NCBI RefSeq assembly: GCF_006345805.1
Contig: NC_043010.1
Span: 3,968,001-4,032,000 of the forward strand
DNA: 64,000 nucleotides
Reading direction: 5' to 3'
Source of the DNA: Octopus sinensis
Taxonomy: Eukaryota
Shown piece by piece: positions 4,950-55,277 of the stretch; the first letter of the stretch is position 1, and the number at the start of each line of letters is the position of its first letter. Made by a program: the position numbers and the translations under genes. The notes beneath the pieces were generated by a model. It was given only the letters and a program-made list of their open reading frames with translations. It did not search any database and was not told where the DNA came from.

Positions 4950-4962
4950 TCATCATCATCAC

Positions 4963-5046
<84 letters not shown>

Positions 5047-5209: not shown

Positions 5210-5271
<62 letters not shown>

Positions 5272-17720: not shown

Positions 17721-18133
17721 CTCTTTTACCTCTTTTACTTGTTTCAGTCATTTGTCTGTGGCCATGCTGGAGCTCCGCCTTTAGTCGAGCAAATCGACCC
17801 CGGGACTAATTCTTTGTAAGCCCAGTACTTATTCTATCGGTCTCTTTTGCTGAACCGCTAAGTGACAGGGACGTAAACACACCAGCATCGGTTGTCAAGC
17901 AATGCTAGGGGGACAAACACAGACACACAAACACACACACATACATACATATATATATATACATATATATGACAGGCTTCTTTCAGTTTCCATCTACCAA
18001 ATCCACTCACAAGGCATCGGTCAGCCCAAGGCTATAGCAGAAGACACTTGCCCAAGATGCCACGCAGTGGGACTGAACCCGGAACCATGTGGCTGGTTAG
18101 CAAGCTACTTACCACACAGCCACTCCTGCGCCT
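17721..18133 (-). mobile_element. SINE family A, full length
   Basis: Head ggcgcaggagTGGCTGTGTGGtaag (A box), GGTTCAGTCCC (B box), internal TA/TG microsatellite, tandem tail. Confidence 0.9.
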
Positions 18134-24165: not shown

Positions 24166-25249
24166 TGCCTACTGGTAAATAGAAGACGAAAAAACTACAT
24201 GCAGTAGCCATTTTGCATGAAGTTCTCTTTGTAAATGTGTGTAAGCATTTATACATACACACACAACCTTGATTATAACTGGAGAATATAAGATTTAGCT
24301 AGTAGTGCATTAGAAACACAACAACTAATAATAATAATAATAATAATAATCCTTTCTACTATAGGCACAAGGCCTGAAATTTGGGGGAGGGGAATAGTTG
24401 ATAACATCAACCCCAGTACACAACTGTTACTTATTTTATTGACCCCGAAAGGATGAAAGGTTAAGTCAACCTCGGTGGAATTTGAACTCAAATCATAAGT
24501 TCAAATTCTGCCAAGATCAATTTTACCTTTCATCCTTTTGGGGTTGATAAAATAATAATAATAATAATAACAACAATAATAATAATAATAACAATAATAA
24601 TAATAATAATAACAATTGTTTCAAAATTTATCATGTGGCCAGCAGTTTTGAAGGAGAATGCTGGCTGGTGCCATTGATATCAATACTTCACTGGCATTAT
24701 ATTTTATTACCTCGTCCTTGAGGGTGAAAGGTGAAGTTGAATTCAGCAAGATTTGAACCCAGAATGTAAATAACCTGAGCAAGCACCACACGGTATTCTT
24801 CCAATGGTCTAAAACTTCTGCCAGCTTGCTGTCTTAATAATGATGATGACAAACTCTCTTGCTGACATATGAGTATTCACTTTTACTGAATGACCTGCAC
24901 AAAGGATTTGTTTATAGTAATCAAAAGCATGTGCTGTACATTAGCTTGCTCTCTTCGTCAAATCAGTGTTACCTGAACAGGTGCATGGTGTATCATGTGT
25001 CAGGTGCTGAGGTGATCGCAGAGCAATGAGGGAGAAAACGTTTTGCTCAAGAACATGGTGCACGGTCTAGGTACTGACCCTGAAAGGATGAAAGGCAAAG
25101 TTGACCTAGGCAGAATTTGAACTCAGAATGTAACTTCAGACGAAATACCGCTAAGCATTTCGCTCAGTGTGCTAACGATTCTGCCGAACTCTGAATATAA
25201 AGATGGAATGAATGTTACACAATAATTATTCTACCATCTTGTAACCTTA

Positions 25250-25464
25250 ATAATGATAATAATAATAATAATAATAATAAAAATAATAATAATAATGATA
25301 ATAAAAATAATAATATTAATAATAATAATAATAATAATAATAAAAATAATAATATTAAGAATAATAATAATAATAATGATAATAATAATAATAATGATAA
25401 TAATAATAATAATAACAATAATAATAATAATATTAATAATAATAATAATAATAAAAATAATAAT

Positions 25465-25505
<41 letters not shown>

Positions 25506-25583
25506 TAATAATAATAATAATAACAATAATAATAATAATATTAAGAATAATAATATAATAAAAATAATAATATTAATAATAAT

Positions 25584-25615
<32 letters not shown>

Positions 25616-26483
25616 TAAAAATAATAAAAATAATAATAATAATAATAATAAAAATAATAATATTAATAATAATAATAATAATAATAATAAAAATAATAAT
25701 ATTAAGAATAATAATAATAATAATGATAATATAATAATGATAATATAATAATAATAATAATAATAATAATATTAATAATAATAATAATAAAAATAATAAT
25801 ATTAATAATAATATAATAATAATATAATAATAAAAATAATAATAATATAATAATAATAACAATAATAATAATATATTAATAATAATAATAATAATAAAAA
25901 TAATAATATTAATAATAATATATAATAATAATAATAATAATAATATAATAATATTAATAATAATATAATGATAATAATAATAATAATAATGGCCCCGTGT
26001 CAGTGGCACGTAAAAGCACCATCCGTTCGTGTCCGTTGCCAGCATTGCCTGGCCCCGTGCTGGTGACACATAAAAACACCATCCGTTCGTGGCCGTTCGC
26101 CAGCTCTGTCTGGCACCTGTGCAGGTGGTACGTAAAAAAACACCACTACACTCGCGGAGTGGTTGGCGTTAGGAAGGGCATCCAGCCGTAGAAACACTGC
26201 CAAATCTGACTGGGCCTGATGAAGCCTTCCGGTTCACAGACCCCAGTTAAACCGTCCAACCCATGCTAGCATGGAAAGCGGACGCTAAATGATGATGATG
26301 ATGATGATGATGAATAATAATAATAATTATAATAATAATAATAATATTAATAATAATAATAATAATAATTATAATAATAATAATAATATTAATAATAATA
26401 ATAATAATAATAAAAATAATAAGAAGAATAAGAATAAGAATAAGAATAATAATAATAATAATAATATTAATAATAATAATAAT

Positions 26484-27780: not shown

Positions 27781-28099
27781 AGCAATAGAGCAGATGAGAG
27801 GGGACAATCCTAACAAGGGTATAATTTTGCTGAGAAGGATGGAATCAATTGGGTTGGCTTTGGTACATGTTTGGTGCTTATTTTAGTTACCCAGCTGGGA
27901 TGAAAAGTAAAGTTGATTCTAGTGAGATTTGAGCTCAGAATGTAGTAAAATATAACTAAATATTGGTAACCATTTTTTATGCTTTACTCTTTCTGTTATT
28001 CACTCATATCTCTGGAATATTGCAACAGTGTAACTCAAATAAAAGTATTTCTAAACAATAACAATGGTGAAAGTCAAAGAAAAGAAAATATATAAAATA

Positions 28100-28504
28100 G
28101 GTGCAGGAGTGGCTGTGTGGTAAGTAGCTTGCTACCCGACCACATGGTTCCGGGTTCAGTCCCACTGCGTGGCATCTTGGGCAAGTGTCTTCTGCTATAG
28201 CCTCGGGCTGACCAAAGCCTTGTGAGTGGATTTGGTAGACAGAAACTGAAAGAAGCCTGTCGTATATATTTATATATATATATATGTATGTGTGTGTATG
28301 TGTTTGTGTGTCTGTGTTTGTCCCCCTAGCATTGCTTTACAACTGATGCTGGTGTGTTTACGTCCCCGTCACTTAGCGGTTCGGCAAAAGAGACCGATAG
28401 AAAAAGTACTGGGCTTACAAAGAATAAGTCCTGGGGTCGATTTGCTCAACTAAAGGCGGTGCTCCAGCATGGCCGCAGTCAAATGACTGAAACAAGTAAA
28501 AGAG
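28100..28504 (+). mobile_element. SINE family A, full length
   Basis: A/B boxes, CORE-like motif, tail gaaacaagtaaaagag. Confidence 0.9.
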
Positions 28505-29929
28505 TATATGAGGAACATAAAATGGGTGCATATTCTGATATGGCAAAAAGAAACTGCTGTAACACTACACTAACCAATGGGCCTCTAGTTTAGCCCTATG
28601 TTAACCCTGCTTCTGCAGGTTTATGATGAACAGCATTTCATCCATGACCATCCTGAAATTTATCCATAGAGACAGTGTGTCTAAGAATAAATATACCATT
28701 TCAAAATGATGATAAGATGTGATTTTCAAGTGCTTTAGTTACTATTTCTGGTTGGCTGAGCGACCATGTAGAGGCTCCTTTATTCTCTGAAGCTGATGAG
28801 ATACACACTAATTTCATGCTGAGGTCAACTGAGTCAACAGAACCTATCCTAAAAAAATATTTACCTTTATGTCACAGTTAGTTTAGGAGGAGAGGAAGGG
28901 AGGGAGAGAGAAGAGAAAAGAACGAGAGAGACATAGAGAGCTCTGAATACAAGATTATATTTAGACAGTAATAAATGATTGACTTTAAGTGATATAAGAC
29001 ACATAGCTTTTGGAAAACAGAACTAAAAGAAATCAAACAAGTCATCGAATGACACTTAGCTTCAAAGAGATAAAAGAAAAACATTGCACTAAAACCAAAG
29101 CATTCCATACCTATAAATACATCTGGTCTAATAGAAATAAGAATGATATCTTTTACAAAGCCCAAAGTACAGGAACTATTCGGAAATTAATAAATCTGAA
29201 AAACGAACTCAATCATAGAAGTAAAAAAAAAAAAAAAGAAAATGAGATTAAAGAAAATATTAAATTCAAACTCAAAGAAGTAAGGATGACCACAATTAAT
29301 GATTGATAAGTTATTCCCCAGATCCCACTCAAGAATAGGAATAGATAGGCTATAAAACATTCAAACACAGCTCTTCAGTAAATTACTCTGTTCACTTTAA
29401 AAGCTATGAACATAAATCAAATCAGCATAATCCATTATATAACTACTTTGATATTAAGAGAATATGCAATCTCAGAATGTAAAATAAAAACAAAATAATG
29501 ACAGATGCAAAGAAACCAAAATGGAATATTAGAATACTAAATAGAATCAAGAGAGTGAGAAGAGACCTATTTTTATTGCAGAATTGAAAGATCAGAATTC
29601 ATGCATAGTTAACAGAGCAAAAAGGAAAAAGGCTCAGTGAAAGTATTAATAAAACATATAAAAATACCAGGAAATCTAAAACAATAGTTACGTGCTAAAG
29701 CCTAGAGGATAAGAATATATTGTGACAGGTAAAACAATAGGCATAAACAAGGCATTTAGAGGAGAACTAGCAGTAATCCTAGTGGCAAATAAACTAAGGT
29801 AATATAAATGTACCGTACCTTCCATCAGCAGATTATTTGAAAAATTTCTTTGATGTATATTAGAAAGAGAAAAAAATATAACAATCATGCTCAATGGATA
29901 GACTTTGTAGAGACTAAATAAGGTAAGAC

Positions 29930-30180: not shown

Positions 30181-30794
30181 GTCCCAAACTTGTAGAATAG
30201 AATTTAAATATCTGGTAGTGGAGTTCAACTAAATTATCGAAATCCTTACATCAGATCCAGAGTGACTTTCATTAATGTAGAAATCAGAAGATACTACAAC
30301 TCAAAGAATTTCAGACATATTACATTTCTATCTCATGCTTTAAAAATCATGTTCTCAAATAACCACAAACCAGATATACTCATACTTGGTGAACAATAGC
30401 CTCCAACCATTAGAAACAAAAAGGTTGCAGAAGGTCATATGGTTGTAAGGACCAGCTAAAGGTCAATAAAATGTTATTGAATGACTAAATGAAAAATAAA
30501 AAGAAAGATAAGCACACACAGCATGTGCATATTGCAAAAGAACATATGAGATTGTCTCTAATTACTTGCTTGTTTTAGAGCCATGGTTCTCTATAAGATT
30601 CTAGAAAATTAAAGTAAAAGAGAGCAAGAGGAACAAATGGATAACTACATTTGTTCTAAAGAACAAAAATATATGGGTTATCCTCAAACCAGATCAGATT
30701 TAGGGATGGAATATTCTAGGCACATTCTCTATTACTCATCCTTTTATGTATGGTCGTAGTCACCTTAAATGAATTGCTTAATTGTGTAGTTTTA

Positions 30795-31400
30795 TGAAAT
30801 CAACTGCCTCCTGTGCATGGATGAAAAAGTTTTGCAGCTAACTAGAGTCCTTGTACCGAACAATTAAAAAAATTCAATGATGGCATCTAGCCTAGATAAA
30901 TGTGTTAGAACCACATTCTAAAACGGAAATTTGGCAGAGTTACAGTAGGAAAGCAAGATGGACTGCATCTCTTGTATGTTATTCAACAACTTGAACTGCA
31001 AGGTGCATATAGGTATATAGAAGTTCAGGTGGAAAACCAAATCAAATATCAAGAAATGAAATCTATTATTAGAAAGGAACTCTGCCAAAGGATGCAATGA
31101 AATATGTGCAATAAGTTAAATGTAAAGAACAAGATTGAAGCCATGAATACAATTGCTATTCTTTCAGTATTGTCCTCTTCAATATTATTAGACAACCATG
31201 AGGTAAAATAATTTCATACAATATCTTGAATTCTGCTTATTATGCACAAAGCTTGTTACCCAAAAGATGTTTTGATGTACTGGATTTAGGTAAACCTACC
31301 AAATAAAAGTAAGGGTTTAGTTCAAACAAAAGTTAGTTTTAAGACAGCTACAGTTTGACAATACATTCATAGAAGCTTCTAAAATCAGCAAGCCATCAGT
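30795..31400 (+). mobile_element. Decayed Dong/R4-type LINE RT fragment
   Basis: INCLLCMDE (cf. HLLYMDD), SSLDKCVRTTF*NGNL (cf. FGLDKCAKATF), AYRYIEV, MKSIIRKELCQRM, KLNVKNKIEAMNTIAI, MHKACYPKD...KGLVQ. Confidence 0.65.
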
Positions 31401-32763
31401 TGGGCCTCTGGGGTTGCTTGATTTGCTATAAATATCAATCAAATTCTTTCAAGTTTCAAGTGTTGAAAATCAAAGAAAGCAGTAAACAATATAGTCTTCA
31501 ATGTACAAAAAGATAGGTTGGTCAAGACTGCAATGCTTTTAGCTATAAGTCTATGCAATCAGAGATCTGACACTAAGCTTCAATAACCAGTTCACAAACA
31601 TAAAGTGTTTGAGTTATATTTTTCCTATAAGATAACAACAAATATATTACGTCAGATGTGTTGTATAAAAGGAAAATAATAATAGTCCTTTCTACTATAG
31701 GTACAAGGCCTGAAATTTGGGGGGAGGGTGCTAATTGACTACATTCGCTCCAGTACTTAACTGATACATTTTTTTATCGATCTTAAAAGGATGAAGGGCA
31801 AAATCAACCCTCGGTGGAATTTGAACTTAGAACACAAAAATAAATTAAATACTGCTTGCTCAATTATCCTAGTAATTGTTTCTAACATAGAAAGAGGGAC
31901 AGTAATTTAAGTGGGAGAGCAGTTAGTGAATCAAATTGACTTCAATATTTCATGAGTACTTTATTGACCCCAAAGGGATGAATTGCAAAGTTGACTGTGG
32001 AGGGATTTGGACTCAGAACATAAAGAGCTGGAACAAAGAGGTGCAAGGTATTTTGAGCAATGCTCTAATGATTCTGTGAGTTCACCATCCTTTGTTTCTA
32101 ACTTGGGCACAAAGTCAGTAATTACACTGACAGTCCCACCTCTATTCCAGTAAATGAGTGGCACTTTATTTTATCAACCTCAAATGGATGAAAATCAAAG
32201 GTGACCTCTGTGGGATTTGAACTCAAAATGTAGAGAGTTGAGACAAATACCATGTGGTATTTGGTCTGATGCTCTGATGATTCTGTTAAGCATTAAAGTA
32301 ACAAGCAGATAAAAAGTTTTAAAATAGCTTATAAAATTATAGGATACTGAACAGAGAAATCTGTGAACACAGACTAATGGAGGTATCAAACTCTTTTGTC
32401 TTACAAGCCCAAGTTTAAAAAGGAAAAGAGAATTGACAATTTCAGAACAAGGCCAATGCATCAACTCCAAACACTACAAGATGACAATCCTAAAAATGAA
32501 AATTGATTTTATATGATGAGGAAACCTAAAATGCATCTTCTAGATATCAGCATTAATGGTTGAGCTAGAGAAGAGTGTTTTGTTGATATAACTACATTTT
32601 CTGGACTGTACAAGAGTGGAATGAATAACGAAATAAGGTTGTTTAATTTCAGTCTCTTCTGTTGTTAGACTAAAATATAACAAAATAGAAATTGATGCAA
32701 AACATGACTGAAGAATGAGTAGGAAATATATTTCTAATAACAGGAGCCTTAAGAGCTATATAT

Positions 32764-32832
<69 letters not shown>

Positions 32833-32833
<1 letters not shown>

Positions 32834-32943
32834 CATTCGACTCACTAGAAAGAGCAGCCAAACGTTTTTATTTCTCTTTCTATTTCAGAGTTACAACTAT
32901 TTAGCGGTTTGAGTTTAGCTGCTCTTTCTAGTGAGTCGAATGT
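32833..32943. repeat. 26-bp perfect inverted repeat (about 31 bp with one mismatch) around a 50-60 nt spacer
   Basis: acattcgactcactagaaagagcagc (32833-32858) / gctgctctttctagtgagtcgaatgt (32918-32943). Confidence 0.9.
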
Positions 32944-33190
32944 CCTATTATGGCCATTCCTTATATTGTTGAATGTATATTATATAGTCTTTGACTATCT
33001 TTTCTTTCTCACTAGACCGCTGGTGGCGGAGAATTTATTCTAGAATTTTCTGCTACCCTTATATTTATTAATATATACACATATATATATATATTTATAT
33101 AGATATGTTAAAAAATCAAAAGAATGCAGAGAAAAAGACAAAGCATTGCTAGGCACAACTGATGGTCTGCACAAGACTTTCTTCATGAAA

Positions 33191-33262
33191 TCAATACAGG
33201 AAGCACATTAATACAAACAACTTAGCAAGAAGCTCTGATAAATAGAGATGATCTGAAGTTAC
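33191..33262 (-). other. PCDH: Candidate short terminal coding exon (VTSDHLYLSELLAKLFVLMCFLY*) after a 72-nt intron (33334-33263)
   Basis: Strong pyrimidine tract and acceptor ttttttattttcAG|GTAACT; minus-strand AATAAA at 33069-33064 and 33039-33034. Confidence 0.45.
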
Positions 33263-35712
33263 CTGAAAATAAAAAATAAAAAATGTCCAGGTATACATAC
33301 AAGCATGTGCAAACAGGATGGTGAAATAACCTACCTGATGTGATCGTTGAGCCATGTTATATGACTGTTTTATAGAAGATGCTCCTTTCAGGCTATGAAC
33401 TGACTTGTATTCGGATTGTGGTTGAGATTTCTGTAATGTTGTTTGAGAATGTCTATGGCCACCATGGTCTGTAACCATTGCTACAGGAACATCATACGGA
33501 TTTCTTTCGTCAAAATATTTGTTTGGGTCATTTATAGCTTCATTGCATCTGATGTTCCTTTGGTTGTTTTTATGAATCATACATACTGCCATAGAAATCA
33601 CAATTGCAACTGATATAATCACAGCTGCTACAACAATGATAACTACTAGATTGATATGTATCTTGTGGTCAGACTTTTTATCAACAGATGTAAACATTTT
33701 GGCTGTGTTGTTGCTAACAGTCAATATCAAAGACAGTGTTGTTGTGGCAGATAGAATCGGACTACCACTGTCCTTTACGCTAAGCTTCAAGTTGTATGAT
33801 CCAGCATCGTTTTGGTAAACCGTGCGAGAGAACGACAATACTCCTGTGTAATGATTTACTGTGAATAATTCTTTGTTATTGCCACCAATTATTTCATATC
33901 TAAGGAAAGCATTGACATGACTGTCTCTGTCAGAAGCTCTCAATACTGTCACCTCGTTGTTACTTTGAGGTTGGTAGTGAACATCTAGACTGAATGGGTC
34001 AACACTTGGAAAGGTAAAATAGGGAGCATTGTCATTTTTATCCATTACCTCCACTATGACATTTGCTGTATTGTTGAGAGATGGTATTCCATTGTCTTTT
34101 ATTAAAACTTGAAATTTATAAATATCCATTTTTTCATGATCAAGTGGCTCTGAAGTTGAAATAAATCCAAAATTCGAAATAACAAAAGGAAGATCATGAA
34201 TTCCTTTACTTAAGAGAAAATATGAAAGTTGACCTCCAGCTCCTAAGTCTGGGTCTGAGGCATTAATAAAACCAACTGGAAAATTTGATTTCTCGTTTTC
34301 ATATGTGAGAAATTTGAATGTATCTTTTGTGAATTGTGGCTGTACATCATTGACATCAGTCACTTGAATATTGAACTTTCTTTCAGTTCTGAGAGGTGGC
34401 GATCCTTTGTCCTGACAACTAATCATAAAATCAATATAGCTCTCTGATTCCCTGTCTACAGGGTTTTTTAAAACAACTTTGTATTTTTTTCTTCCAAGCT
34501 TTTGAAGCTGTAGTTTATCATGGTTGAGATCACATACCACTTCTCCATTTTGATTGACATCATTGTCACTTACTTTCACATAAGCAATAAAACTATTGGT
34601 TTTGACACCTTCAGAAATTGTTGTTATATTGCCTATTGGCTCAGAGACAAACTTGACATCAAGACTTGGAGCATTATTTTGTCTGTTTATTATGTTCACA
34701 AGAACCATTGCAGTAGAGCTCAAGGGTATACTTCCTTTATCAATGGCTTCAATAAATAATTTGTATGTTTTTCTCTTGTGAATGGAAAATTTCTAGCTAA
34801 GAAAATCTTGCCTGATGTTTCATTTAAGTAAAATAATGTTTTTGCAAAATCGGAAGTTTTTGAACTGAAATAGTATGAAACTTTTCCATTTTCACCCGAA
34901 TCTAAATCTGTAGCATATACTGTAACAATTGGTGTGTATATGTCTTGTCTGTTGTTAATGGAGACATTATAAACGTTTTTGGAGAAAACTGGTTGATTGT
35001 CATTCTCATCAGTGACAGATACATGAATGGTTAAAATACCCTGGTGTGATGGAGTACCATCATCTTTAGCAATCACTTGAAGTGTATAAGTGGAATTTAT
35101 TTCTCGGTCAAGTTTCCTTTGTAAAATGATATCAAGTTTAGAGGTGCCATCAATTTTTTTCTTAACTAACAATATAAACGGATCATTGACATTATTTTCT
35201 AGATGATATGTAATTTGAGAATTTAGAAAACCAACATCTTTATCTGTAGCACTTGGAAGTGTTATCTTCGTACCTTTTCCATCTCTCTCCGAGAATTGCA
35301 TGTCAACTGTTTTAACTGGAAATTCTGGCTGGTGATCATTAACATCATCAATAATAACTTTTACTTCAATGACCTTCACAAAAGATTCTTTATGCCGAAC
35401 AGCTACTTCCACTATTTTGAAACATTCTGTGTGGTATTTACAAAGTGACTCAGCGTCAAGCATTTGAGAGGTATACATCATTCCATTTTTGCCAACCTTA
35501 AACATTGGAGCATTTCCACTGAGACTCTCATGGAGTCTGCTGAATGTAATCCTATTTAATTCTTCAGCATGAAAGCTGTTGTAGAGATGTGCATCAGAAG
35601 CTATGTTTCCTACCAGGGTATCAGGATTCTGACCCTCTTTCACATGGTAGGTAATGTCTATACATACTGATGTATTCAACATGATCACTAGTAAAAATAG
35701 TGTTATTGACAT
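33191..35712 (-). CDS. PCDH: Protocadherin (signal peptide, 6 cadherin repeats, TM, short cytoplasmic tail), split into two overlapping ORFs by one net -1 frameshift in EC3; intact gene with an assembly indel, or a pseudogene
   Basis: ORF 34720-35712 gives signal MSITLFLLVIMLNTSVC, EC1 with the protocadherin C-X5-C motif (LCKYHTECF), DVNDHQP, LDRE and DENDNQP. ORF 33191-34723 and its upstream in-frame extension (KTYKLFIEAIDKG) give EC3 end to EC6 (VDRE, DVNDVQP, LDHE, DKNDNAP), TM INLVVIIVVAAVIISVAIVISMAVCMI and a basic juxtamembrane segment. The CDS from 35712 to the donor at 33335 is 2378 nt, one base short of 793 codons. Confidence 0.95.
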
Positions 35713-35780
35713 GTCTTGAACGTCAAATCTTGCCTGTGCTGTTGTTCTGTCACTGAAGTTAACTCTGAATAATTTTCAAT
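33335..35780 (-). other. PCDH: Predicted large ectodomain+TM exon of the protocadherin, with splice sites
   Basis: Minus-strand acceptor ttttcaatttcAG|ATTG (AG at 35782-35781), 68-nt ATG-free leader, then gacATGt at 35712; phase-0 donor CAG|GTAGGT at 33335/33334. Confidence 0.75.
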
Positions 35781-36306
35781 CTGAAATTGAAAATAATTAG
35801 CTTTGAAATAAATGTAAATAAACAGTAAAAAATAAAAGACACAAAATATAACCAGCAAATAAATAAACACAAAAAAATATATGACGAAATATTTCCAATC
35901 TATCAAATTGAAATGTACTATCTTCTGGAAAATGAATTCTACTAACATTACTCTGTAATTATTAAAGGAATTTAAAACCTATTTCAGCTAACACTCCATA
36001 GGAAACAGAAGAAAAAAAGTAATTATCTTGGGGATGTCTTATAAACATCTCATTTAGTTTGTAAGCTGAAAACAGAAAGAAGCTTAAAGAGAAAGGAACC
36101 TCAAAGTTATTGAGAAGAGATAAAGATTGAATTCTATAAGAGAAGGAAAATGACTTGAATAGAATAATATATGTATCAGTGTATGCATAACTATAGAGTT
36201 ATATATATATACATATATATATATATATACTCACATACACATTTGTACATTTATATACATACATCTTCAATCATACACAGATATTGCATATATGTATATA
36301 TATATA

Positions 36307-36344
<38 letters not shown>

Positions 36345-37181
36345 GTATATACAAATACACATGCATATGTATATATAAAAGAGGATAAACAAAAGCACAC
36401 AAAGATATTTAAAAGAAGAGAAAAATAACAGAAATAAGGAAACACAGAGTAGTTAGATTAAGAGCAGACGTGATGCTTAAGTGGAGTGAAGAAGAAAAAG
36501 TCTCTGGTGAATTCACTTTGAAAGTATGTATTTGCCAAGATGGTTAATGGATTGCTGCCATAGAAATCCGCTGAGTGGCTTTGCTGTCAGTGGAAAATGG
36601 CAGTAGAAGGCATTATTAGCCACTGAGATATATGAGGAAGTAAGAAGTACATCCTAATCCTTCTGGGTCAAAGATGGCAAGGTTAGCATGAAAGAAGATA
36701 AATATTTTTTTGTATACAGCAAAAGAACCCTCACAGGGACAGTAGGTTGCCAAGGAAACATGTTAGGCTAACAAAGAAGCTGGAATGGTCTCAAAACATT
36801 CATGATAAAATTGCTTTTCCTTTCTTATATTCTTTGCCTTTTTTTTTCCTTATTTCCTTTTACTTTCTTTTTTTTTCTTTCTTATTTTGTTTTCTTTCTT
36901 TTTTTCCCCCATTTTTCCAGTTATTCTTTGTATTTGTGGTAGATATAGTCTTCCATAGATTCTCTCAGATCAAGTTTAATTATACCAGTTGGCAGGTTTT
37001 CTTCCTGACAATCATACATTTTTGATTAACATTTACAATAAAAGAATATTCTGCTTGAAAACAAAGACTTTTGTCAACTATCTAGTTGAGTTAATTAAAC
37101 CTACCATCTAGACTTTACTTCTTTCTAAGATAACATTTTTTGAATATGACACACACACACACTTATATATGTATATATCTT

Positions 37182-37251
<70 letters not shown>

Positions 37252-37559
37252 TGTAGATGTAGATATTGCACCATTGTTTTCTAAGATATCATGCTTAAAA
37301 TTCTCAAAATTAAAAAAATAAAACAATATCTTGCATTCTTTAGGTTTATGTTGTCACGTATAAGATTATTTTCTAATATCACTTTAAAAATTAACCTTCA
37401 TTAATCAAGAATTTTTGAAATAATCATTTACATGTAATGACATTACAAACAGATAACATGCTTCATCCAATTAAATTCTCACATTGTGTATGTGGGTGGG
37501 TGGGTGCATATTTGCGTGTGCTTGCAAAATGCTTAAAATAAATAAACAAAAGTAATTGA

Positions 37560-37607
<48 letters not shown>

Positions 37608-38732
37608 TAAATTTCAGCTTATATATTAATTTATTTTATACATAGCAATGAGCAAGTCATGCACATTAGCTTAATGCAGTATATATTATGCATTTTGAAA
37701 ACTGGCCAGTTTTAGAATGGCAAGCCTATATAATAAACTGAGATTAAGATAAAAAAAAACAATTAAATTAAAAGGAAGAGAAAGAAATTAACAATTCAAG
37801 AACTCATTAAAATAGCAACTTAGTGGGGGGGGGGGGGAATGTAAAGATTTTAGAATCTGGCAAAATACAAAAAAAAGTAAAGATAAGAATGTATGTTGTA
37901 TTTGTGTTTGTGTGTGTGTGTATACATATACATGCATGTGTGTGTATATTTATACATCAACACATACATACACACACATATATATATATATATACACATA
38001 TATGTATATATATATTTATATATATATACACACATATATATATATTCATAAATATAAACATGTATATGTATGTAAAGATATATATATATACACCTATATG
38101 TGTGTGCTTATATACATCAACACGCACACACATATATACACACATATATATATATATGTATATTTATATATACATACATGTATATCTATCTATATATATA
38201 TACTTGCATACATGTATATACATACACACACACACATATATATGTATATACATATATATGTACACACACATACATATATATAGATATGTATATATATACA
38301 CACATACACATATATGCATATGTATATGTGTATATATATATATATATCTATACACACAAGCACATACCCACACATACATATACATATATATATCTATATA
38401 TATATGTATGTATATTCATACGTATGTATAAGCATACACACATGCACATATATGTATTTATACATACATGGATAGACACTCACACACACACACACATATG
38501 GGCACACAAGGAATCATGTATATGAATAAATATATTTGAATTTGTCCATAGGTAAAACAAAACTGTTTAGATAATTGTATATTATACAGAGGAAAATGAC
38601 AGTGGGCTTCAATGCACACCAAAACATTAAAACAAATTGTGAAAAAAAAGCAACAAACAGACAAAAACTAAATAAGCAAAATAATATTTTAAAAAAAGTG
38701 TTTATCATTCTTTAAGTACAATTAATATAGTT

Positions 38733-38794
<62 letters not shown>

Positions 38795-38984
38795 CATATA
38801 TACATACATATATATGAGACAGATGTGTGTGTGTGTAAATGTATATACACAAACATATAAACATTCTCACAGACACATGTTTATATATATTTTAAATGAT
38901 AATGTACCTAAACTTGAAATATAATGCTATATATATATATATGTGTGTGTGTTAGTGAGCACTCACTTACTCTACACTAGCCTT

Positions 38985-39020
<36 letters not shown>

Positions 39021-39348
39021 TTCACATACATATGTTCATGTGTACGTATATCAAATATATATGTATTGAAAGCACCTATATATATTTGTACTCTCATACA
39101 CTAACACACATACACACATGCACGCACATATGTATTCATGTATTTATCTGTTCATATGGGCATATACATCTGTGTGTGTGTGTGTGGTTGCGTGTGTGTG
39201 TATGTGTGTGTGTGTGTGGCTATAACGTATTCATTAATCTATATACCTTTCTCAAATGTATTTTTCTGTCATTGTACATACAAACATGTGTGCACATACA
39301 TATGCTCAGAAATGCACATACTTTATATATATATACACACTCACCCAC

Positions 39349-39379
<31 letters not shown>

Positions 39380-39894
39380 CAGTTATGTGTATGTATATGA
39401 AGTTAGATAATAAACGTATGATAACCTATACATTGCATGTGTGTGAGTGTGTGTGTGTGTATATATATACATAGTTATAGCCATACACACTCAGAAAGAG
39501 AAAAACATATTAAATGAAGAAAGTTAAAGAGGAAAGGGTGTAGAATAGAGAGATACAGACTTGGAAAGTGAGAAATAGTCTGCAAAATATTCGTGTGGCA
39601 AAAGGAAAAAGTGTAGAAGTATCTGAGCCCATGTGCATGAGTAAAAGTGGTTGCATACATATATATAGACACATACACACACGCACACACGTGTGTATGT
39701 GTGTGTGCATATGTGCAAACATGGGTGAGTATACATATGTATGCGAATGTTGGGTGGTTGTGTATGCGATATATACACACATTCACACATGTATTGTTAA
39801 GACTTTACCATTTGCATGTAAACATACATATAGAGAAAAGCAGATATACAGGAAACATGAATGAATGGATGAGAGGCAGTTGATCAAGCAGGTA

Positions 39895-39968
<74 letters not shown>
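39895..39968. repeat. (GA)n microsatellite
   Basis: Direct reading. Confidence 0.95.
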
Positions 39969-39975
<7 letters not shown>

Positions 39976-40609
39976 AGGTTGACTGAGAGAAAGCAAGCAA
40001 AGAGACAGCTTGGGCAAAACAGAAGAAGAGAAAGAGAGAGTAGGGTCTTTGACAGAAACTATTTAACTATTTGAAAATGAAAGTATTCATGTCATTTTTT
40101 TAAAAATTTTGCCGAAAGAGATATTAATGTTTGTTTATGCTGCAGTATATGTTACCTTTCTAATACTTTCTAAGTAATATATAGAATATAATTTAGGAGA
40201 AAAGAATCTAGAAACTAACTGATTCTACACTTTCTGAAGTGAATAATTTCTTTCAAAACTATTTCATTCCAGACTTTAATCTTATTTTAGTTGCTTCTGT
40301 ATACCTCATGTATACAGTGAAAAATGATTTAAGTAGCATTTATGAAGTTGAAGTGTTATTAAATTCAGCTTTTGTATCAAAAATCATATTAAAAAAAAAC
40401 ATTCCTTCATTGGTCAAAAATGACTTTTTTTCAATTATTTTTTACAAGTAATTTCATAAGACTTCTTTAGAAGAGTTATAAGACAAATCAGTAAAAGAAA
40501 AAAAAAAGAAGAAAATAACAAACCAAAACTAAGTACTTCTACCATTTAAACTTTTAGGGTTATTAAATAAACCAAGAGTAGAAAATATAGAAAAGAACTG
40601 CATACTCAC

Positions 40610-40810
40610 CTATATGGGAAAAATTTCTGTAGCTTACGTTCAACTCAGATGTGTGTATCCTGCTGTAGATCTGTACAGTTACTGCTGCTGTTATGAGCAA
40701 GCAGTGTTATTTATATGTAGCTTAGTCTGTGTTATGTGAATTTGAAAGAGAGGTCTGCAGTCTTATCAAGAATGGTGTGTATGTAATATCTGCTGCAGCC
40801 AATGATTGGC
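40610..40810 (-). promoter_or_regulatory. Candidate protocadherin promoter and non-coding first exon
   Basis: On the minus strand: palindromic GCCAAT-N-ATTGGC (40798-40810), TATAAATA (40715-40708), Inr-like GCAGT with A at 40683 (32 nt after the TATA start), ATG-free about 74-nt exon ending in a perfect donor AG|GTGAGT at 40610/40609. Confidence 0.55.
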
Positions 40811-40979
40811 AGGTTATGGTTCCCGAGAAGGGGAAGCAGAAAACTTGCTTTCTGGTTTTACTGTAAAATAGAGAAGAGTTACTTTATATATATATGTGTA
40901 TGTGTTTGTGTTTGTGTGGTTACATCCATATATATATATATATGATGATGATGATATATCTATATATATGTGTATATAT

Positions 40980-41026
<47 letters not shown>

Positions 41027-41615
41027 GTGTGTGTATATTCACGTGTATGTGTGTGTGAATACATGCACACACACACACACACACATATTTATATATTTAT
41101 ATATAAATGTTTATATATTTCAATAATCTTTATATATTTGATCTAAAATGTTTACACATCTTTTGAACAATTTTTATTACATATTTCTTTCTTTAGAATT
41201 TTGAGTAATAATTTTAGGTGAAGTTTACAAAAATGGAAGAGCTCTCATGTAGTTTCCTAAAATCTCTAAGCATACATAATGTATATTAACTTTTTATTAA
41301 ATCAGAACTTTTTAACAGAAAGTGTACCCAATACATGTTGTTGAGTATATTTATTTGCACTGAAACAGGTAATTTGCTCAGAGTTTCTTAATCAGTGCAT
41401 TTATATGTGTGTACATGTACATGCGTCTGTGTATATGTGTACATGTGTTATTTTCTTTGTTGATCTGGCATTTCTACCTGAAGGACCTCTATGAGTTAAA
41501 AACTCTGAGTAACAATGGAGTGAATCACTACCAACTTTGAATATATATATATATATAATATATATATATAGTACGTTTAAATATTTGTTGTGCAAGATTT
41601 TTTTTTTTTTTTTTT

Positions 41616-44883: not shown

Positions 44884-45111
44884 GGCGAGCTGGCAGAAAC
44901 GGTAGCACACCAGGCGAAATGCGTAGCCGTATTTCGTCTGCTGTTACGTTCCGAGTTCAAATTCCGCCGAGGTCGACTTTGCCTTTCATCCTTTCGGGGT
45001 CGATAAATTAAGTACCAGTTACGCACTAGGGTCGATGGAATCGACTTAATCGCTTTGTCTGTCCTTGTTTGTCCCCTCTGTGTTTAGCCCCTTGTGGGTA
45101 GTAAAGAAATA
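44884..45111 (+). mobile_element. SINE family B, full length
   Basis: Near-identical to 3651-3884 and 62542-62775. Confidence 0.9.
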
Positions 45112-45153
45112 TATATGCAAGTGTGTGTGTGAGAGAGAGAGAGTATATATGTA

Positions 45154-49162: not shown

Positions 49163-49410
49163 ATGCCATTATAACAGCAGTAGAGAAAACAGAAAGAGGA
49201 AACATTATGCTCATGGACCAGGGTTGAAACATGCTTGTTAGTATTCAAATGCTAACCAATCAAATGTACTTATACAATTTTTGCAGTGACTTTTATAATT
49301 TCCTTATATTAAAATATCCTTTTTGCTTTTTCATTGTAGCTGTGTCATGAAGTTCACACCCATGAAAATATTTGGGTAGGTGCCAAATTCATTTTCTAAT
49401 AAATATATAC

Positions 49411-49618
49411 TCTTTTACTCTTTTACTTGTTTCAGTCATTTGACTGTGGCCATGCTGGAGCACTGCCTTTAGTCGAGCAAATCGACTCCGGGACTTATTC
49501 TTTGTAAGCCCAGTACTTATTCTATCGGTCTCTTTTGCCGAACCACTAAGTGATGGGGACATAAACACACCAGCATCGGTTGTCAAGCAATGCTAGAGGG
49601 ACAAACACAGACACACAA

Positions 49619-49630
<12 letters not shown>
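49411..49630 (-). mobile_element. SINE family A, 3' half (further fragment at 49903-49950)
   Basis: ctcttttacttgtttcagtcatttgactg...gggacaaacacagacac. Confidence 0.85.
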
Positions 49631-49673
<43 letters not shown>

Positions 49674-50874
49674 ATATAGAGGGCATTATACATACATGCC
49701 AGAAGGCATTATACATTCATGCCACACGCTAAGAGGGACAATTAGTCATTTCTACCAAAAATAATTATTTTCGAAATTTTTTCTCTTATGAGGTTTTCAC
49801 GCTATCTACCTGACAATTTCTTGTTAAGTTTTCCTTATTAAGTAGTTGTCCTTAATTGCTATATATATATATATATATTATATATATATATATACATATA
49901 TACGACAGGCTTCTTTCAGTTTCCGCCTACCAAATCCACTCACAAGGCCATTTTTTAAACCAGTGTTGTTCTTATCGTGTTTCCTTACTAATGTTGTTCT
50001 AAGCTGTATAGACTGTGTATTGCAAGAGTTCATTTAAAGCAGTATCTCATTCTTGCTGCTCTATGTTTCTTATATTATCATCTTTACATAATAGCATATG
50101 TTTCTCATTGTCAATGAGTACAGATATCCCCCAGTGTGCATGTAATATTTCTCTAAGCATGAACATTCTTTAGAAAGAGAAAAAGTCATAAATGCCTGAG
50201 ACAGTGAAACAGAACTGTCAAAACTTCAATATTCTGAAGTCTTCATGAAAAATTCATAACTAGAGAATAATTATTTGCTAGAGAGAATATTTTGATGCTT
50301 CAGTATGACAGATAAGAGATTAAAAACGAGCAAATCCTTGCTGATTAAAACAAACGAATTCCATATATGCAAATGAAAAAAAAAAGGGGGTAACTACTGA
50401 TTTACAGATGCTATTATAGCATAATAAGTGTTGACTCAAACATTCTGCAGAAGGAAAGCAAATGTTCTAGCAAGCTCTAACTGCAAGGACTTCACAATTA
50501 CATCTTCTTTCGTTTGTTAGTGACGGGAAACCAAAAAGGGAATCATTTTGGACCCCTCGATTTCAACCTACATTCGAAATGTAAATTATTCTCAGAAAGT
50601 AATTCAGTTCAGAGCATTTGATTGGCAGAATTATTTGGGTATTGGGTATGACTTTTTTTTCTTCATCCTTTGGACTTTTAAGGCCAGTTACCCTGATTCC
50701 ATGGTATATAAATAACTGAGATCACAATATTTCCCCTGAATGGAACATCGATCCATTGCAAGGTCTTAGGCCAGCCATTTTGAGGGAAGAGAACAAGCTG
50801 ATTACATTGACCCCAGTATTTGACTGGTACTTCATTTTATTGACTTCAAAGGGACGAAAGGCAAAGTTGATACC

Positions 50875-51106
50875 TATTTCTTTATTACCCACAAGGGGCT
50901 AAACATAGAGGGGACAAACAAGGACAGACATAGGTATTAATTCGATTACATCGACTCCAGTGCGTAACTGGTACTTATTTAATCGACCCCGAAAGGATGA
51001 AAGGTAAAGTCGACCTCGGTGGAATTTGAACGCACAACGTAATGCAGACGAAATACCGCTAAGCATTGCACCCGGCGTGCTAACATTTCTGCCAGCTCGC
51101 CACCAT
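50875..51106 (-). mobile_element. SINE family B with 17-bp target-site duplication, nested in an older related SINE
   Basis: TSD aaggcaaagttgatacc at 50858-50874 and 51107-51123. Confidence 0.9.
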
Positions 51107-51513: not shown

Positions 51514-54470
51514 CTCTACTTACTGGTTTCCTTTAGCAAGTACTGTGAAATCTATGTTTCATGAAGGAAGTTAAATAATACCAACATATATCTCAAGTTT
51601 TTCCCCATACTTGCTGAAATAATTAGAATAGCATTAATCATTGAGCCAATATTGTCTGTTGTTCACTGCATTAAAAGTTTCACATCAAGCATGTTCACCC
51701 CTACATAATTGTCAGTTTTTATGCATATTGTATCACTCAACTACTGAATTCAGCCTTCTTTTTTTAGTCAGCTTGGTTCCTAATTTAAGTATAGATGTAA
51801 GAACATTTTAAAATATCTAGTCTCACAGTTGATTCAGTAGAAAATCATATCACATTTGCCACTAACCATACTTTTTACATGACAAAATATACTGATTTAA
51901 GCTTTCTCAGAATGTCGCTTTACTGCCATAATATGTTTTGTAACGTTTAATAGCCTGTTGGTGTATGTTATCTCCAGATATGTTCTTCTAACAGACACAC
52001 CCCTGACAGACACACTCTCTTTCTCAAATATAATACTTTAGAAACATTTAAAACAGAGTTTAGATGGTGTTTACACTTCTTATGCAGTATTTACATTTCT
52101 AATCCAAGTAAAGCAAATAACTTGGGGAAATTAAGATTTAGTTATAATTTAATGTAAGTATTAATTTAAATGTATAAAATGTATAAAAGAAATATTACTT
52201 ACCATTGAATATTTATTAGTCTAGCTAAGATATTTTGTGTTCAAGTGATGAGTATTTTGCTTTTCTATGGTTGCCAATGACATCAGTGTTAAGCAGGTGT
52301 AATTTGTATTGTTATATTGCTAACAAGATGCCATTCATTATATCATAGCTTTCAAATGTCTGAAAACTAGAGTCACATAGCAGCTTTGAATTGAATAATT
52401 AGTTTGTAACAAAATGAATGAAACAAATATCTAAGACATAGAAAAAGGTTTCATCAAGATCTAAATGTTTGTAAACAATTTTTATTAATTACTTTGTTGC
52501 TGTGATATTTCTGTCTACACTTCAGCAATTATTATATTTTACTAATGACAAACCAACATGGAAATCCTTGTTTCTTTTGAAATAATATGGAAGGTAATAA
52601 TTACTGTTACATTTGTAATATGTGTAAGCATGTTGATATTACAAATGAACTGCAATATTTGCACCTGTTGTTGAGAAGCAATCCTTAGGAAAGTTTAACA
52701 GGATTCCTATAAACGTTTTGGCTTGTTTTTTTTTTCATATATTTTGATTAAATTGTTTGCAAATTTGTTGTAGGAATGTTAAGCAAATATTACAATTGCA
52801 GATGATTTTAAGACCAATGTAGCAAAATAAAATAGATAGAATTGTTTATTTACAACTAAGGATTTATATACAATAAGACTTTGTGAATATAATATTTATA
52901 TCTTTATATAGCTTTTGGCCTTTGTACTCATGCCATTTTGCACTTAAACTTCACAGTACTTGTTTTAGATAAAAAAAACCAAAAAAAAAAACAATAATAA
53001 TAAAAAGATTATGGTATTGTCTTAATAGTACAAATCAATCAATTTGTAATAAACTTGAAAGAATTTTCATGGTTTGTGGTTTTTTTGCTTTTTGTTTCAT
53101 TTTATTTTTAATATTTCTTTCTTTTCTCAGTTTAAACTCAGATAAATACTGTTTGCAAAGATGAAGGGAATTACTGGAATATTTCTGTAATAATTAGCTG
53201 GCTTTGAAAATATATAGGGCATCATATTTGAAGATTTAGTAAACTATAGTGCTGTAGCTTATTAAAGACTCTATTTGTTTAAAAGACCTTTTTTTATTAT
53301 TATTAAACCAGAAAAACATCAACAACATGAAGCAAAATACAACTGTCAGTAATTACACAGAAGCTAAGTTAATGTTTTTCCTAGAAGAATTATGTAGAAA
53401 TAATTAGAACATTATATAAAATATATTCTGATTTGTGCAGTATCTTTCTGTAGCACAGCAGTCATGCTTATTTACAATAATTAGAATAATTATAGTGGGG
53501 TTTAAACATGTTTACTGTTAATTATATTGACATTTTATATTTGAAAAGAACCTATATGTAACATTGGTGTTTCTCGTTAGAAAAGACTTAATGAATGGAA
53601 TAAAGTTATTTTTATGGTTTTGGTACTTTAGGTACAGATGGCAGGGGTTTGGGGAAAGAAGAGAAACTATTTTTTATTGGTAAATTCCAAGGTTCTGGGA
53701 GATTAGCAGTTTTTATTCTTAAGGATTTAAGATCAATAACATCATTGCAGACAGTTTTTTTATCAACAATAGCTTGACTGGAATGTTTTGTAGAAATATC
53801 CTTGGGTTTGTGTGTTGTCCATGGTAAAGAACTCCTACTTTTGTGTTGCTGTTGATCCTCTTGACTGTGCTTGAAACCTCGTAAAAATAAACAAAGAAAA
53901 CAAAAATGTTCATCATGAGCTGAAATTACACAGTATGAACATTCTCTTCATTGAATTCTAATTATTGTTATGCTATATTTTTGTAACTAGTTATATTCTC
54001 CGTCTTTACATAAACATCATTATATTATATATCACATTGAATATTATTAATATCCATGGTGAAATTTTTTAAGAAATTAAACTTGTCTTAAGCATTAATT
54101 TTAGTTATGTTCCTCAATATATTAATCTATAGAAATATAAAAGGAAATATTTATTCATTTAATAGTAATTAAGAGAAATGTACTATTGATATCTATTGTT
54201 GAGAATAATATTACATCCAAAATATTGAATGCATAAAAAAAAATTTGTAAAAGCAGTGAAGAGCAAGCACTTCCTTCAGAGTTTTGTATAAGTAACAAAT
54301 TTTTGTTAATAAAACATTGAAATAGTGAAAATTATGAAAATAAGGTAAATTTTACCATTGTTTGATAAAATGAATAGTCTATTTTTCAATGAAACTATTC
54401 TCTAGTTAGTGCTCAAATAATTTTTGAAGTAATCCAAAATATATACACTCCAAGAACTATGTGTATAGTA

Positions 54471-54830
54471 GGCGCAGGAGTGGCTGTGTGGTAAGTAGCT
54501 TGCTAACCAACCACATGGTTCCGGGTTCAGTCCCACTGCGTGGCATCTTGGGCAAGTGTCTTCTACTATAGCCCCGGGCCGACCAATGCCTTGTGAGTGG
54601 ATTTGGTATATATATACATGTGTGTGTGTTTGTGTGTCTGTGTTTGTACACCTAGCATTGCTTGACAACCGATGCTGGTGTGTTTACGTCCCCGTCACTT
54701 AGCGGTTCCGCAAAAGAGACTGATAGGATAAGTACTGGGCTTACAAAGAATAAGTCCCGGGGTCGATTTGTTCGACTAAAGGCGGTGCTCCAGCATGGCC
54801 GCAGTCAAATGACTGAAACAAGTAAAAGAG
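54471..54830 (+). mobile_element. SINE family A, near full length
   Basis: A/B boxes, CORE-like motif, tail. Confidence 0.9.

Positions 54831-55244: not shown

Positions 55245-55277
<33 letters not shown>

What the first reader, a model, noticed from the sequence alone, without database searches (positions are those of the whole stretch)
34720..34800. Single -1 frameshift in an otherwise intact protocadherin coincides with an in-frame A_AAU_UUU slippery heptamer
Seen: both halves (about 790 codons in total) are stop-free. The shift must lie between the -1-frame TAG at 34795-34793 and about 34768. That window holds AAATTTT (34792-34786, minus), with AAT TTT as zero-frame codons, and an A5 run (34772-34768). 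Established: X_XXY_YYZ heptamers support -1 ribosomal frameshifting, and homopolymer indels are the commonest long-read assembly error. Inference: most likely a missing A (restoring FPFTREKTYKLF) or a very recent null allele. The long shot is programmed -1 shifting, giving a 330-aa secreted EC1-EC3 decoy plus the full membrane protein. I see no obvious downstream stimulatory hairpin or pseudoknot.
Basis: partly seen in the sequence, partly recalled or inferred. Interest (0 to 1): 0.7.

Follow-up and report, generated by a model that had tools for sequence, protein, structure and literature searches.

The report
One-base gap in octopus protocadherin
An octopus cell-adhesion (protocadherin) gene is split by one missing A, most likely a sequencing-assembly error or else a very young broken copy, and the "slippery" ribosome site beside it is an ordinary sequence that intact copies carry too.

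Summary
On the minus strand a 330-codon ORF (35712-34720) and a -1-frame ORF (34792-33335, then a GT donor) together encode a full protocadherin. The window is 100% identical to the Octopus sinensis reference assembly (GCA_006345805.1).

Against the O. vulgaris ortholog and the intact tandem paralog in both species, the only indel in this 2.4-kb exon is one missing A in ACAAAG (A3 to A2, 34777-34776). The A5 run is unchanged. The true reading is FPFTKRKTYKLF, not FPFTREKTYKLF.

The AAATTTT heptamer is present, in frame, in every intact copy examined, including a distant ortholog (dS 0.92). Such heptamers occur at chance frequency, and no significant downstream RNA structure exists. Recoding is not supported.

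The gene is old and constrained: omega is 0.08 against the distant ortholog and 0.04 against O. vulgaris. The deletion lies in a 790-bp tract otherwise identical to the paralog about 30 kb away, homogenised by gene conversion, where short reads cannot polish a long-read consensus.

The O. vulgaris ortholog has its own separate A6-to-A5 frameshift.

Verdict:
- assembly error, about 0.6
- real, very recent null allele, about 0.37
- programmed frameshifting, about 0.015

The feature is ordinary.

The parts
33335..35712 (-). Large first exon of protocadherin 'copy B' of Octopus sinensis: signal peptide, cadherin repeats, transmembrane helix and proximal cytoplasmic part. It is 793 codons once the frame is joined.
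   Evidence: ORFs. Pfam Cadherin and Cadherin_2. 94% identity to O. vulgaris protocadherin beta-18. Nine-protein alignment.
34720..35712 (-). Upstream ORF, 330 codons plus TGA. The last 19 codons (REKHTNYLLKPLIKEVYP) are out of frame relative to homologs.
33335..34792 (-). Downstream reading frame (-1 relative to the upstream ORF), open from just after the TAG to the splice donor.
34776..34777 (-). The actual lesion: an AA run where the O. vulgaris ortholog, both intact paralog A copies and the distant ortholog have one more base (ACA AAG, codons T-K, in the Octopus copies).
   Evidence: DNA alignments. It is the only indel in the window's exon.
34786..34792 (-). In-frame A_AAT_TTT heptamer encoding the conserved R-N-F of the NFPF motif. 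It is incidental.
   Evidence: Identical in the intact O. vulgaris and O. sinensis copies and in the 'A. hians' ortholog. Heptamer density is at chance level.
34768..34772 (-). It is unchanged (A5) in ortholog and paralogs.
34793..34795 (-). TAG in the -1 frame, the upstream limit for any frame change.
34302..35091 (-). A 790-bp tract that, apart from the missing A, is identical to paralog A of the same genome, which lies about 30 kb away just beyond window end.
   Evidence: Four-way alignment. Positions of copy A.
34464..34469 (-). A6 run, intact here, where the O. vulgaris ortholog has A5. That is its own independent frameshift.
   Evidence: The O. vulgaris gene is annotated as two proteins of 418 and 417 aa.
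33333..33334 (-). GT splice donor ending the large exon.
   Evidence: Homologs continue with a different exon after ...HQ.

Best explanation
The frameshift is most likely a single-base deletion error in the consensus of the long-read Octopus sinensis reference assembly, inside a functional protocadherin gene. This gene (copy B) and its tandem paralog (copy A, about 30 kb away) are kept nearly identical over about 1.7 kb by gene conversion. A raw-consensus error in one copy survives polishing because short reads from both copies align better to the error-free copy. The true gene would read ...NFPFTKRKTYKLF... and encode an ordinary full-length protocadherin. Shown: the position and nature of the lesion, its absence from all relatives, the long-term constraint on the gene, and the identical paralogous tract. 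Inferred: that the missing base is an artefact rather than a mutation.
For: (1) The window is 100% identical over 20,389 bp to GCA_006345805.1. From my own knowledge of its title (Li et al. 2020), which I did not read here, this is a PacBio plus Hi-C assembly. (2) The only indel in the 2,379-bp exon is one A missing from a short A run, absent from the ortholog and from both intact paralog A copies. (3) There are no other defects: no stops in the joined frame, and 13 synonymous against 2 non-synonymous differences from the O. vulgaris ortholog, omega 0.04. The copy-B-specific EC2 segment (second cadherin repeat) is conserved against the 'Argonauta hians' ortholog at omega 0.05, with dS above 1. 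(4) The B-specific segments (447 bp) differ from O. vulgaris at 2 sites, both synonymous, while non-coding flanks differ at 1.3-1.8%. The gene was therefore constrained for most of the roughly 2.5 My since the species split (date from PMC10700109). (5) The deletion lies in 790 bp otherwise identical to copy A. If it were real, it would have arisen before any substitution in either copy, which is improbable given usual indel-to-substitution ratios. (6) The density of 1-bp indels in the exon pair (2 in 2.4 kb) equals the non-coding density (about 0.8 per kb). Longer indels are 0 in the exon against 26 in the 8.3 kb of flanks. (7) The O. sinensis assembly is the shorter one at small indels more often than O. 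vulgaris: 30 to 10 one-base gaps by blastn, 15 to 7 by MAFFT, and 31 to 15 for all gaps of 5 bp or less by MAFFT.
Against: No reads could be examined, so the artefact is inferred and not seen. A3 is a short run, not the classic long homopolymer. The indel asymmetry depends on the aligner and is not significant for 1-bp gaps under MAFFT (15 to 7, p about 0.13). The O. vulgaris ortholog of the same copy is also frameshifted, at another site, while copy A is intact in both species. That modestly favours a biological loss of constraint on copy B. The low ortholog omega is partly produced by gene conversion from the intact copy A. No protein model for this locus from O. sinensis appears in the protein collection.
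Confidence: 0.6

Rival explanations
1. The deletion is real: a very recent null allele or newly fixed pseudogene of copy B in O. sinensis. It arose after the last gene-conversion event with copy A. The mRNA would end at the TGA at 34722-34720, giving a signal peptide plus EC1-EC2 and a truncated EC3, and would probably be degraded. Loss would be tolerated because about 160 protocadherin genes, including a near-identical neighbour, remain.
For: The O. vulgaris ortholog of the same copy carries its own independent 1-bp deletion (A6 to A5), and its annotators split it into 418-aa and 417-aa proteins. Copy A is intact in both species. Large tandem families turn over quickly: 161 protocadherin genes are reported in O. 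sinensis, with recent expansion bursts (PMC9795677). Truncated protocadherin models are common in both annotations. No intact O. sinensis protein model for this locus is on record.
Against: This is a single lesion with no sign of relaxed selection (omega 0.04, and 0 non-synonymous changes in the B-specific segments). There are zero substitutions between copies A and B across the surrounding 790 bp, so the mutation would have to be very young. Both frameshifts are one-base losses in A runs inside tracts that short reads cannot place, which is what long-read consensus errors look like. The O. vulgaris assembly is ONT R9.4.1 based (PMC10700109).
Confidence: 0.37
2. The deletion is real and is partly compensated by programmed -1 ribosomal frameshifting at A_AAU_UUU (34792-34786). 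This would yield a truncated secreted product plus a full-length protein in which SIH replaces PFT.
For: An in-frame X_XXY_YYZ heptamer lies 9 nt upstream of the lesion and directly after the last -1-frame stop. A -1 slip there restores the downstream frame. A long-range 9 + 7 bp pairing begins 3 nt after the heptamer.
Against: The heptamer is ancestral. It is identical and in frame in the intact ortholog, in both intact paralog A copies and in a distant ortholog at dS 0.92, where it simply encodes the conserved R-N-F. Heptamer density equals the codon-shuffle expectation, 7 against 7.2 +/- 2.7. Folding of the 60 and 80 nt downstream gives z about +0.2, and of the 100, 120 and 150 nt gives z of -1.74, -1.33 and -0.65, none of them significant. 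The one long-range stem has a 3-nt spacer and a loop of about 70 nt, unlike known stimulators. The two-frame arrangement is not conserved in any relative. The product would alter the near-invariant NFPF motif.
Confidence: 0.015

Closest known systems
Cephalopod expanded protocadherin family (about 160 tandem genes per octopus genome; Albertin et al. 2015 from my own knowledge; PMC9795677)
   Same: It has a single large exon encoding the signal peptide, cadherin repeats and transmembrane helix. It is 94% identical to the annotated O. vulgaris and O. sinensis 'protocadherin beta-18' and lies in a tandem array with close paralogs.
   Different: In this assembly the exon carries a one-base frame break, and no O. 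sinensis protein model for it appears in the collection searched.
Residual single-base deletion errors of long-read assemblies in duplicated sequence
   Same: It is a one-base loss in a mononucleotide run, unique to this assembly. It sits inside a 790-bp tract identical to a paralog, in a gene with no other defect.
   Different: The run is only three bases long, and no read-level proof was obtainable here.
Programmed -1 ribosomal frameshift sites of viruses and retroelement-derived genes such as PEG10 (own knowledge)
   Same: There is an in-frame X_XXY_YYZ heptamer followed by an open -1 frame.
   Different: There is no stimulatory structure at a 5-9 nt spacing, no conservation of the overlap, and no enrichment of heptamers. 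The heptamer is also present in relatives that need no frameshift.
Gene conversion among vertebrate clustered protocadherin variable exons, with specificity-determining EC2/EC3 escaping homogenisation (Noonan et al. 2004, own knowledge)
   Same: Copies A and B are homogenised over codons 208-771 within each species. They stay distinct in the signal peptide, in EC2 (codons 132-207) and at the exon's 3' end.
   Different: This is a different animal lineage with an independent expansion. Here the pattern matters mainly because it explains why the lesion cannot be polished or dated easily.

Membership tests
Programmed -1 ribosomal frameshift signal | Slippery heptamer X_XXY_YYZ in the zero frame | tested here: met
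   A_AAT_TTT at 34792-34786 with AAT TTT as zero-frame codons.
Programmed -1 ribosomal frameshift signal | Stable hairpin or pseudoknot starting about 5-9 nt downstream | tested here: not met
   Downstream folds give z +0.22 (60 nt), +0.27 (80 nt), -1.74 (100 nt), -1.33 (120 nt) and -0.65 (150 nt). The only stem is long-range, with a 3-nt spacer. Pseudoknots were not searched explicitly.
Programmed -1 ribosomal frameshift signal | The two-frame arrangement is conserved in orthologs | tested here: not met
   The ortholog, the paralogs and a distant ortholog are all in one frame across this site.
Programmed -1 ribosomal frameshift signal | Heptamer presence exceeds chance or is specific to the shifted gene | tested here: not met
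   7 observed against 7.2 +/- 2.7 in codon shuffles. The same heptamer is present in intact copies.
Programmed -1 ribosomal frameshift signal | Measured frameshifting, by reporter, ribosome profiling or peptides | not testable with these tools
   No expression or proteomic data were reachable.
Octopus protocadherin | Tandem cadherin repeats after an N-terminal Cadherin_2 domain, then a transmembrane helix | tested here: met
   Pfam PF00028 and PF08266 on both halves. Hydrophobic stretch INLVVIIVVAAVIISVAIVISMAVCMI. Alignment to annotated octopus protocadherins.
Octopus protocadherin | Orthology or close paralogy to annotated family members in a tandem array | tested here: met
   94% to P0001 and P0125. 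There is a collinear 10.9-kb match at 96.5% to the O. vulgaris locus, and a neighbouring paralog about 30 kb away.
Decaying pseudogene | Disabling lesion | tested here: met
   One 1-bp deletion in the assembled sequence.
Decaying pseudogene | Relaxed selection (omega near 1) or several lesions | tested here: not met
   Omega 0.04 against the ortholog and 0.08 against the distant ortholog, with a single lesion. The ortholog value is partly confounded by gene conversion.
Decaying pseudogene | Lesion confirmed in independent reads or individuals | not testable with these tools
   The exact 330-aa product is not on record elsewhere. No independent contigs of this gene were found.
Long-read assembly indel error | Single-base length change in a mononucleotide run, private to one assembly | tested here: met
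   A3 to A2, absent from four related copies.
Long-read assembly indel error | Located where short-read polishing is blind, in near-identical duplicated sequence | tested here: met
   790 bp otherwise identical to paralog A in the same genome.
Long-read assembly indel error | The assembly shows an excess of small deletions relative to a sister genome | tested here: inconclusive
   One-base gaps are 30 to 10 by blastn (p 0.002) but 15 to 7 by MAFFT (p about 0.13). Gaps of 5 bp or less are 31 to 15 by MAFFT.
Long-read assembly indel error | Raw accurate reads contradict the consensus | not testable with these tools
   No read data were accessible.

The most novel reading that the evidence does not exclude
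The one-base deletion is real, and ribosomes slip -1 at the pre-existing A_AAU_UUU heptamer nine bases upstream often enough to make some full-length protocadherin (with SIH in place of PFT) alongside a truncated secreted EC1-EC3 fragment. That would be an accidental rescue of a fresh frameshift by a chance slippery site in an animal cellular gene. A milder novel reading, at about 0.1, is that copy B is truly broken independently in both O. sinensis and O. vulgaris while gene conversion from copy A keeps the rest of it looking pristine.
Probability: 0.01. Interest if true: 0.75.

Novelty: not a real feature. Interest (0 to 1): 0.1.

Why it matters
The practical value is for annotation. This locus in the O. 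sinensis reference, and its ortholog in the O. vulgaris reference (currently two protein records of 418 and 417 aa), probably each represent one intact protocadherin gene. Counts of octopus protocadherin genes and pseudogenes are sensitive to such one-base consensus errors in recently converted paralogs. If the deletions turn out to be real, they would give a small example of parallel, very recent loss of one member of a large neuronal-identity gene family. There is no support for recoding.

Tried and rejected
- **Exact look-up of the 330-aa truncated product in public assemblies.** It is not on record, so there is no independent confirmation of the deletion.
- **Searches for read-derived or transcript contigs of this gene.** I ran the full restored protein, a 337-aa piece spanning EC2 and the junction, and cluster listings. 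Only NCBI and UniRef models came back.
- **QBA31110.1 (P0237).** It looked like a possible full-length transcript of copy B. It proved to have a third paralog's EC2 and junction, and a divergent second half, so it is a different gene or a chimeric transcript assembly.
- **Search for copy B's next exon in the window.** I found nothing. The reason is that in O. vulgaris it lies about 76 kb downstream, outside the window, so 'otherwise intact' cannot be extended beyond the large exon.
- **Ortholog dN/dS as a clean test of constraint.** The four-way alignment showed that gene conversion from copy A contributes to the low value. I therefore relied on the B-specific segments and on the distant ortholog.
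- **Indel-direction asymmetry.** It was strong with blastn's cheap gaps (30 to 10) but weaker with MAFFT (15 to 7). I report it as suggestive only.
Rejected by the alignments.
- **Scan of metagenome contigs for the deletion-spanning pattern.** Not run, because octopus DNA is not expected there and the intact pattern is shared with copy A.

Full report
**What is in the sequence**

- On the minus strand an ATG-initiated ORF of 330 codons runs 35712-34720. A second ORF, one base out of register, is open from just after a TAG at 34795-34793 down to 33191.
- The second ORF passes a canonical donor (CAG|GTAGGT) at 33335/33334, where homologs switch to another exon.
- Both halves are cadherin-repeat protein (Pfam PF00028, E 7.5e-24 and 4.8e-41, with an N-terminal PF08266). 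A transmembrane stretch follows.
- AAATTTT sits at 34792-34786 with AAT TTT in the zero frame, and an A5 run sits at 34772-34768.

**Where the window comes from**

- A search with the joined protein returned octopus protocadherins. The best hit, at 94%, was O. vulgaris 'putative protocadherin beta-18' (P0001).
- The cluster of P0001 includes O. sinensis XP_029644834.1 (P0125).
- The locus of P0125 in GCA_006345805.1 (CM016872.1) matches window 43612-64000 at 100% over 20,389 bases. The window is therefore a piece of the O. sinensis reference assembly.
- P0001 and P0125 are not this gene. They are a tandem paralog, here called copy A, whose large exon lies about 30 kb away just beyond window end.
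- The true O. vulgaris ortholog of the window's gene (copy B) is collinear with window 30787-41570 at 96.5%. It is annotated there as two proteins of 418 and 417 aa.

**Where the frame breaks**

- I aligned the window's exon with the O. vulgaris ortholog and paralog, with both A copies, and with a distant ortholog.
- The window has exactly one indel in 2,379 bp. CACAAAG in all Octopus relatives reads CACAAG here, so one A of an A3 run is missing (window 34777-34776).
- The A5 run is A5 in all four O. sinensis and O. vulgaris copies.
- Homologous proteins read NFPFTKRKTYKLF. NFPFT matches the upstream frame and KRKTYKLF matches the downstream frame.

**Is it a recoding site?**

- The heptamer is identical and in frame in the intact ortholog, in both intact A copies, and in the 'Argonauta hians' ortholog at dS 0.92. 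In all of them it simply encodes the conserved R-N-F.
- The restored ORF contains 7 in-frame X_XXY_YYZ heptamers. Codon shuffles give 7.2 +/- 2.7.
- At that density, a heptamer somewhere in the 23-codon rescue-competent stretch is expected about 18% of the time.
- RNA folding downstream of the heptamer gives z-scores of +0.22 (60 nt), +0.27 (80 nt), -1.74 (100 nt), -1.33 (120 nt) and -0.65 (150 nt).
- The only notable pairing is a long-range 9 + 7 bp stem. It starts 3 nt after the heptamer and encloses about 70 nt, which is unlike known stimulators.
- A slip at the heptamer would replace PFT by SIH within the near-invariant NFPF motif.
- None of the defining features of a programmed site beyond the heptamer itself is met.

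**Is the gene alive?**

- Against the O. vulgaris ortholog there are 13 synonymous and 2 non-synonymous differences (omega 0.04), and no stops in the joined frame.
- The four-way alignment complicates that figure.
  - 111 fixed A-versus-B differences cluster in codons 2-51, codons 132-207 (EC2) and codons 772-791.
  - Codons 208-771 are almost identical between A and B within each species.
  - That homogenised region carries six sites where both copies of one species differ from both copies of the other. This is concerted evolution by gene conversion after the species split.
  - Part of the low omega could therefore be imported from the intact copy A.
- Two observations escape that objection.
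  - The B-specific segments (447 bp) differ between the species at only 2 sites, both synonymous. Non-coding flanks differ at 1.3-1.8%.
  - The 'A. hians' gene P0002 is B-type in EC2: dN is 0.105 to copy B against 0.262 to copy A, with omega 0.05 in EC2 and 0.08 overall at dS about 0.9.
- Copy B is an old, constrained gene, and it remained constrained for most of the roughly 2.5 My since O. sinensis and O. vulgaris separated (date from PMC10700109).

**Error or mutation?** No reads were reachable, so this rests on inference.

For an artefact:
- The lesion is a private one-base loss in an A run.
- It lies in 790 bp (35091-34302) that are otherwise identical to copy A of the same genome. Short reads from both copies would align preferentially to the error-free copy, so polishing fails there. 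This step follows from established knowledge of read mapping and was not tested here.
- If the deletion were real, it would have preceded any substitution in either copy across those 790 bp.
- One-base indels are as dense in the exon pair (2 in 2.4 kb) as in non-coding DNA (about 0.8 per kb). Longer indels are 0 in the exon against 26 in the 8.3 kb of flanks.
- O. sinensis tends to be the shorter sequence at small indels. One-base gaps are 30 to 10 by blastn (p 0.002) and 15 to 7 by MAFFT (not significant). Gaps of 5 bp or less are 31 to 15 by MAFFT.

For a real mutation:
- The O. vulgaris ortholog of the same copy B has its own one-base loss (A6 to A5, at the position equivalent to window 34469-34464).
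- Copy A is intact in both species. That hints that copy B may be dispensable.
- However, the O. vulgaris lesion is a classic homopolymer error for an ONT R9.4.1 assembly (technology from PMC10700109). It also lies in about 1 kb identical to its paralog.
- The family is large (161 genes in O. sinensis, PMC9795677), and null alleles would be tolerable.

I put the assembly error at about 0.6, a real very recent null allele or pseudogene at about 0.37, and programmed frameshifting at about 0.015.

**Comparison with what is known**

- The gene is an ordinary member of the cephalopod protocadherin expansion.
- The lesion fits the known class of residual long-read consensus errors in duplicated sequence or, failing that, a young pseudogene in a fast-turnover family.
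- The mosaic of homogenised core and divergent EC2 parallels what is described for vertebrate clustered protocadherins (own knowledge). It is the most interesting by-product of this analysis.
- Nothing here is new in kind.

**What would settle it**

- Count the deletion-spanning k-mer in the raw short reads of the reference individual, or tally long reads or a Sanger amplicon anchored in the B-specific EC2 segment.
- Reporter assays are worth doing only if the deletion is confirmed.

Noticed in passing
window 34464-34469 (equivalent to L001 ~43204): The O. vulgaris ortholog of this gene has its own independent one-base deletion (A6 to A5). It is annotated as two separate proteins, CAI9732406.1 (418 aa) and CAI9732405.1 (417 aa). 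The window is intact at that site.
   Followed up: yes
window 33335-35712 versus L001 and L002 10046-12390: There is concerted evolution between tandem paralogs A and B. Codons 208-771 are homogenised within each species, with six species-specific sites shared by both copies. The signal peptide, EC2 (codons 132-207; A-versus-B dS 0.73, dN 0.29) and the last 20 codons stay distinct.
   Followed up: yes
window 53615-53884 (-) and 40817-40861 (-): Terminal coding exons of the upstream paralog A lie inside the window. The O. sinensis model (P0125) ends in the exon at 53884-53615. The O. vulgaris model (P0001) instead ends in a 15-aa match at 40861-40817, only about 5 kb upstream of copy B's start. 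Copy B's own second exon is about 76 kb downstream in O. vulgaris, so the gene bodies may interleave.
   Followed up: partly
P0237 (QBA31110.1, O. vulgaris 'protocadherin', 810 aa): This GenBank protein has copy B's signal peptide, a third paralog's (P0003-type) EC2 and junction, and a much more divergent second half. It is either a further mosaic paralog or a chimeric transcript assembly.
   Followed up: partly
L003 (GCA_054771915.1, labelled Argonauta hians) 3014-5340: Proteins labelled Argonauta hians are 81-88% identical to this subfamily, and one is B-type in EC2. The best full-length O. bimaculoides protein is about 60-62% identical. Three short O. bimaculoides 'uncharacterized' fragments (125-259 aa) fall in the 90% cluster of P0001. 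This subfamily may be mis- or under-annotated in O. bimaculoides.
   Followed up: partly
window 34774-34782 and 34695-34703 (-): The deleted sequence UUCACAAGA is perfectly complementary to UCUUGUGAA 70 nt downstream. With the ancestral extra A, the complementarity would be interrupted after 7 bp. The fold is not significantly better than shuffles (z -1.3 to -1.7).
   Followed up: yes
window 13177-13635 (+): This ORF matches the Pfam Transposase_1 partial DDE domain (E 8.4e-15). It is a mariner-like transposase remnant.
   Followed up: no
window 4824-5351, 25248-25990, 10463-12518: The other long ORFs of the window are made of simple repeats, (CAT/CAC)n and (TAA)n. There is also a block of 336-400-bp tandem repeats at 10.5-12.5 kb, where GC rises to 0.45-0.49.
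   Followed up: no
window 653-989, 17721-18133, 28099-28512, 49403-49667, 54470-54832, 55056-55451: An interspersed repeat of about 400 bp is present in at least six copies in the window at 83-93% identity to copies in the O. vulgaris locus. A second family of about 230 bp occurs at 3648-3889, 44884-45116, 50870-51104 and 62543-62780. Both are presumably SINE-like elements.
   Followed up: no
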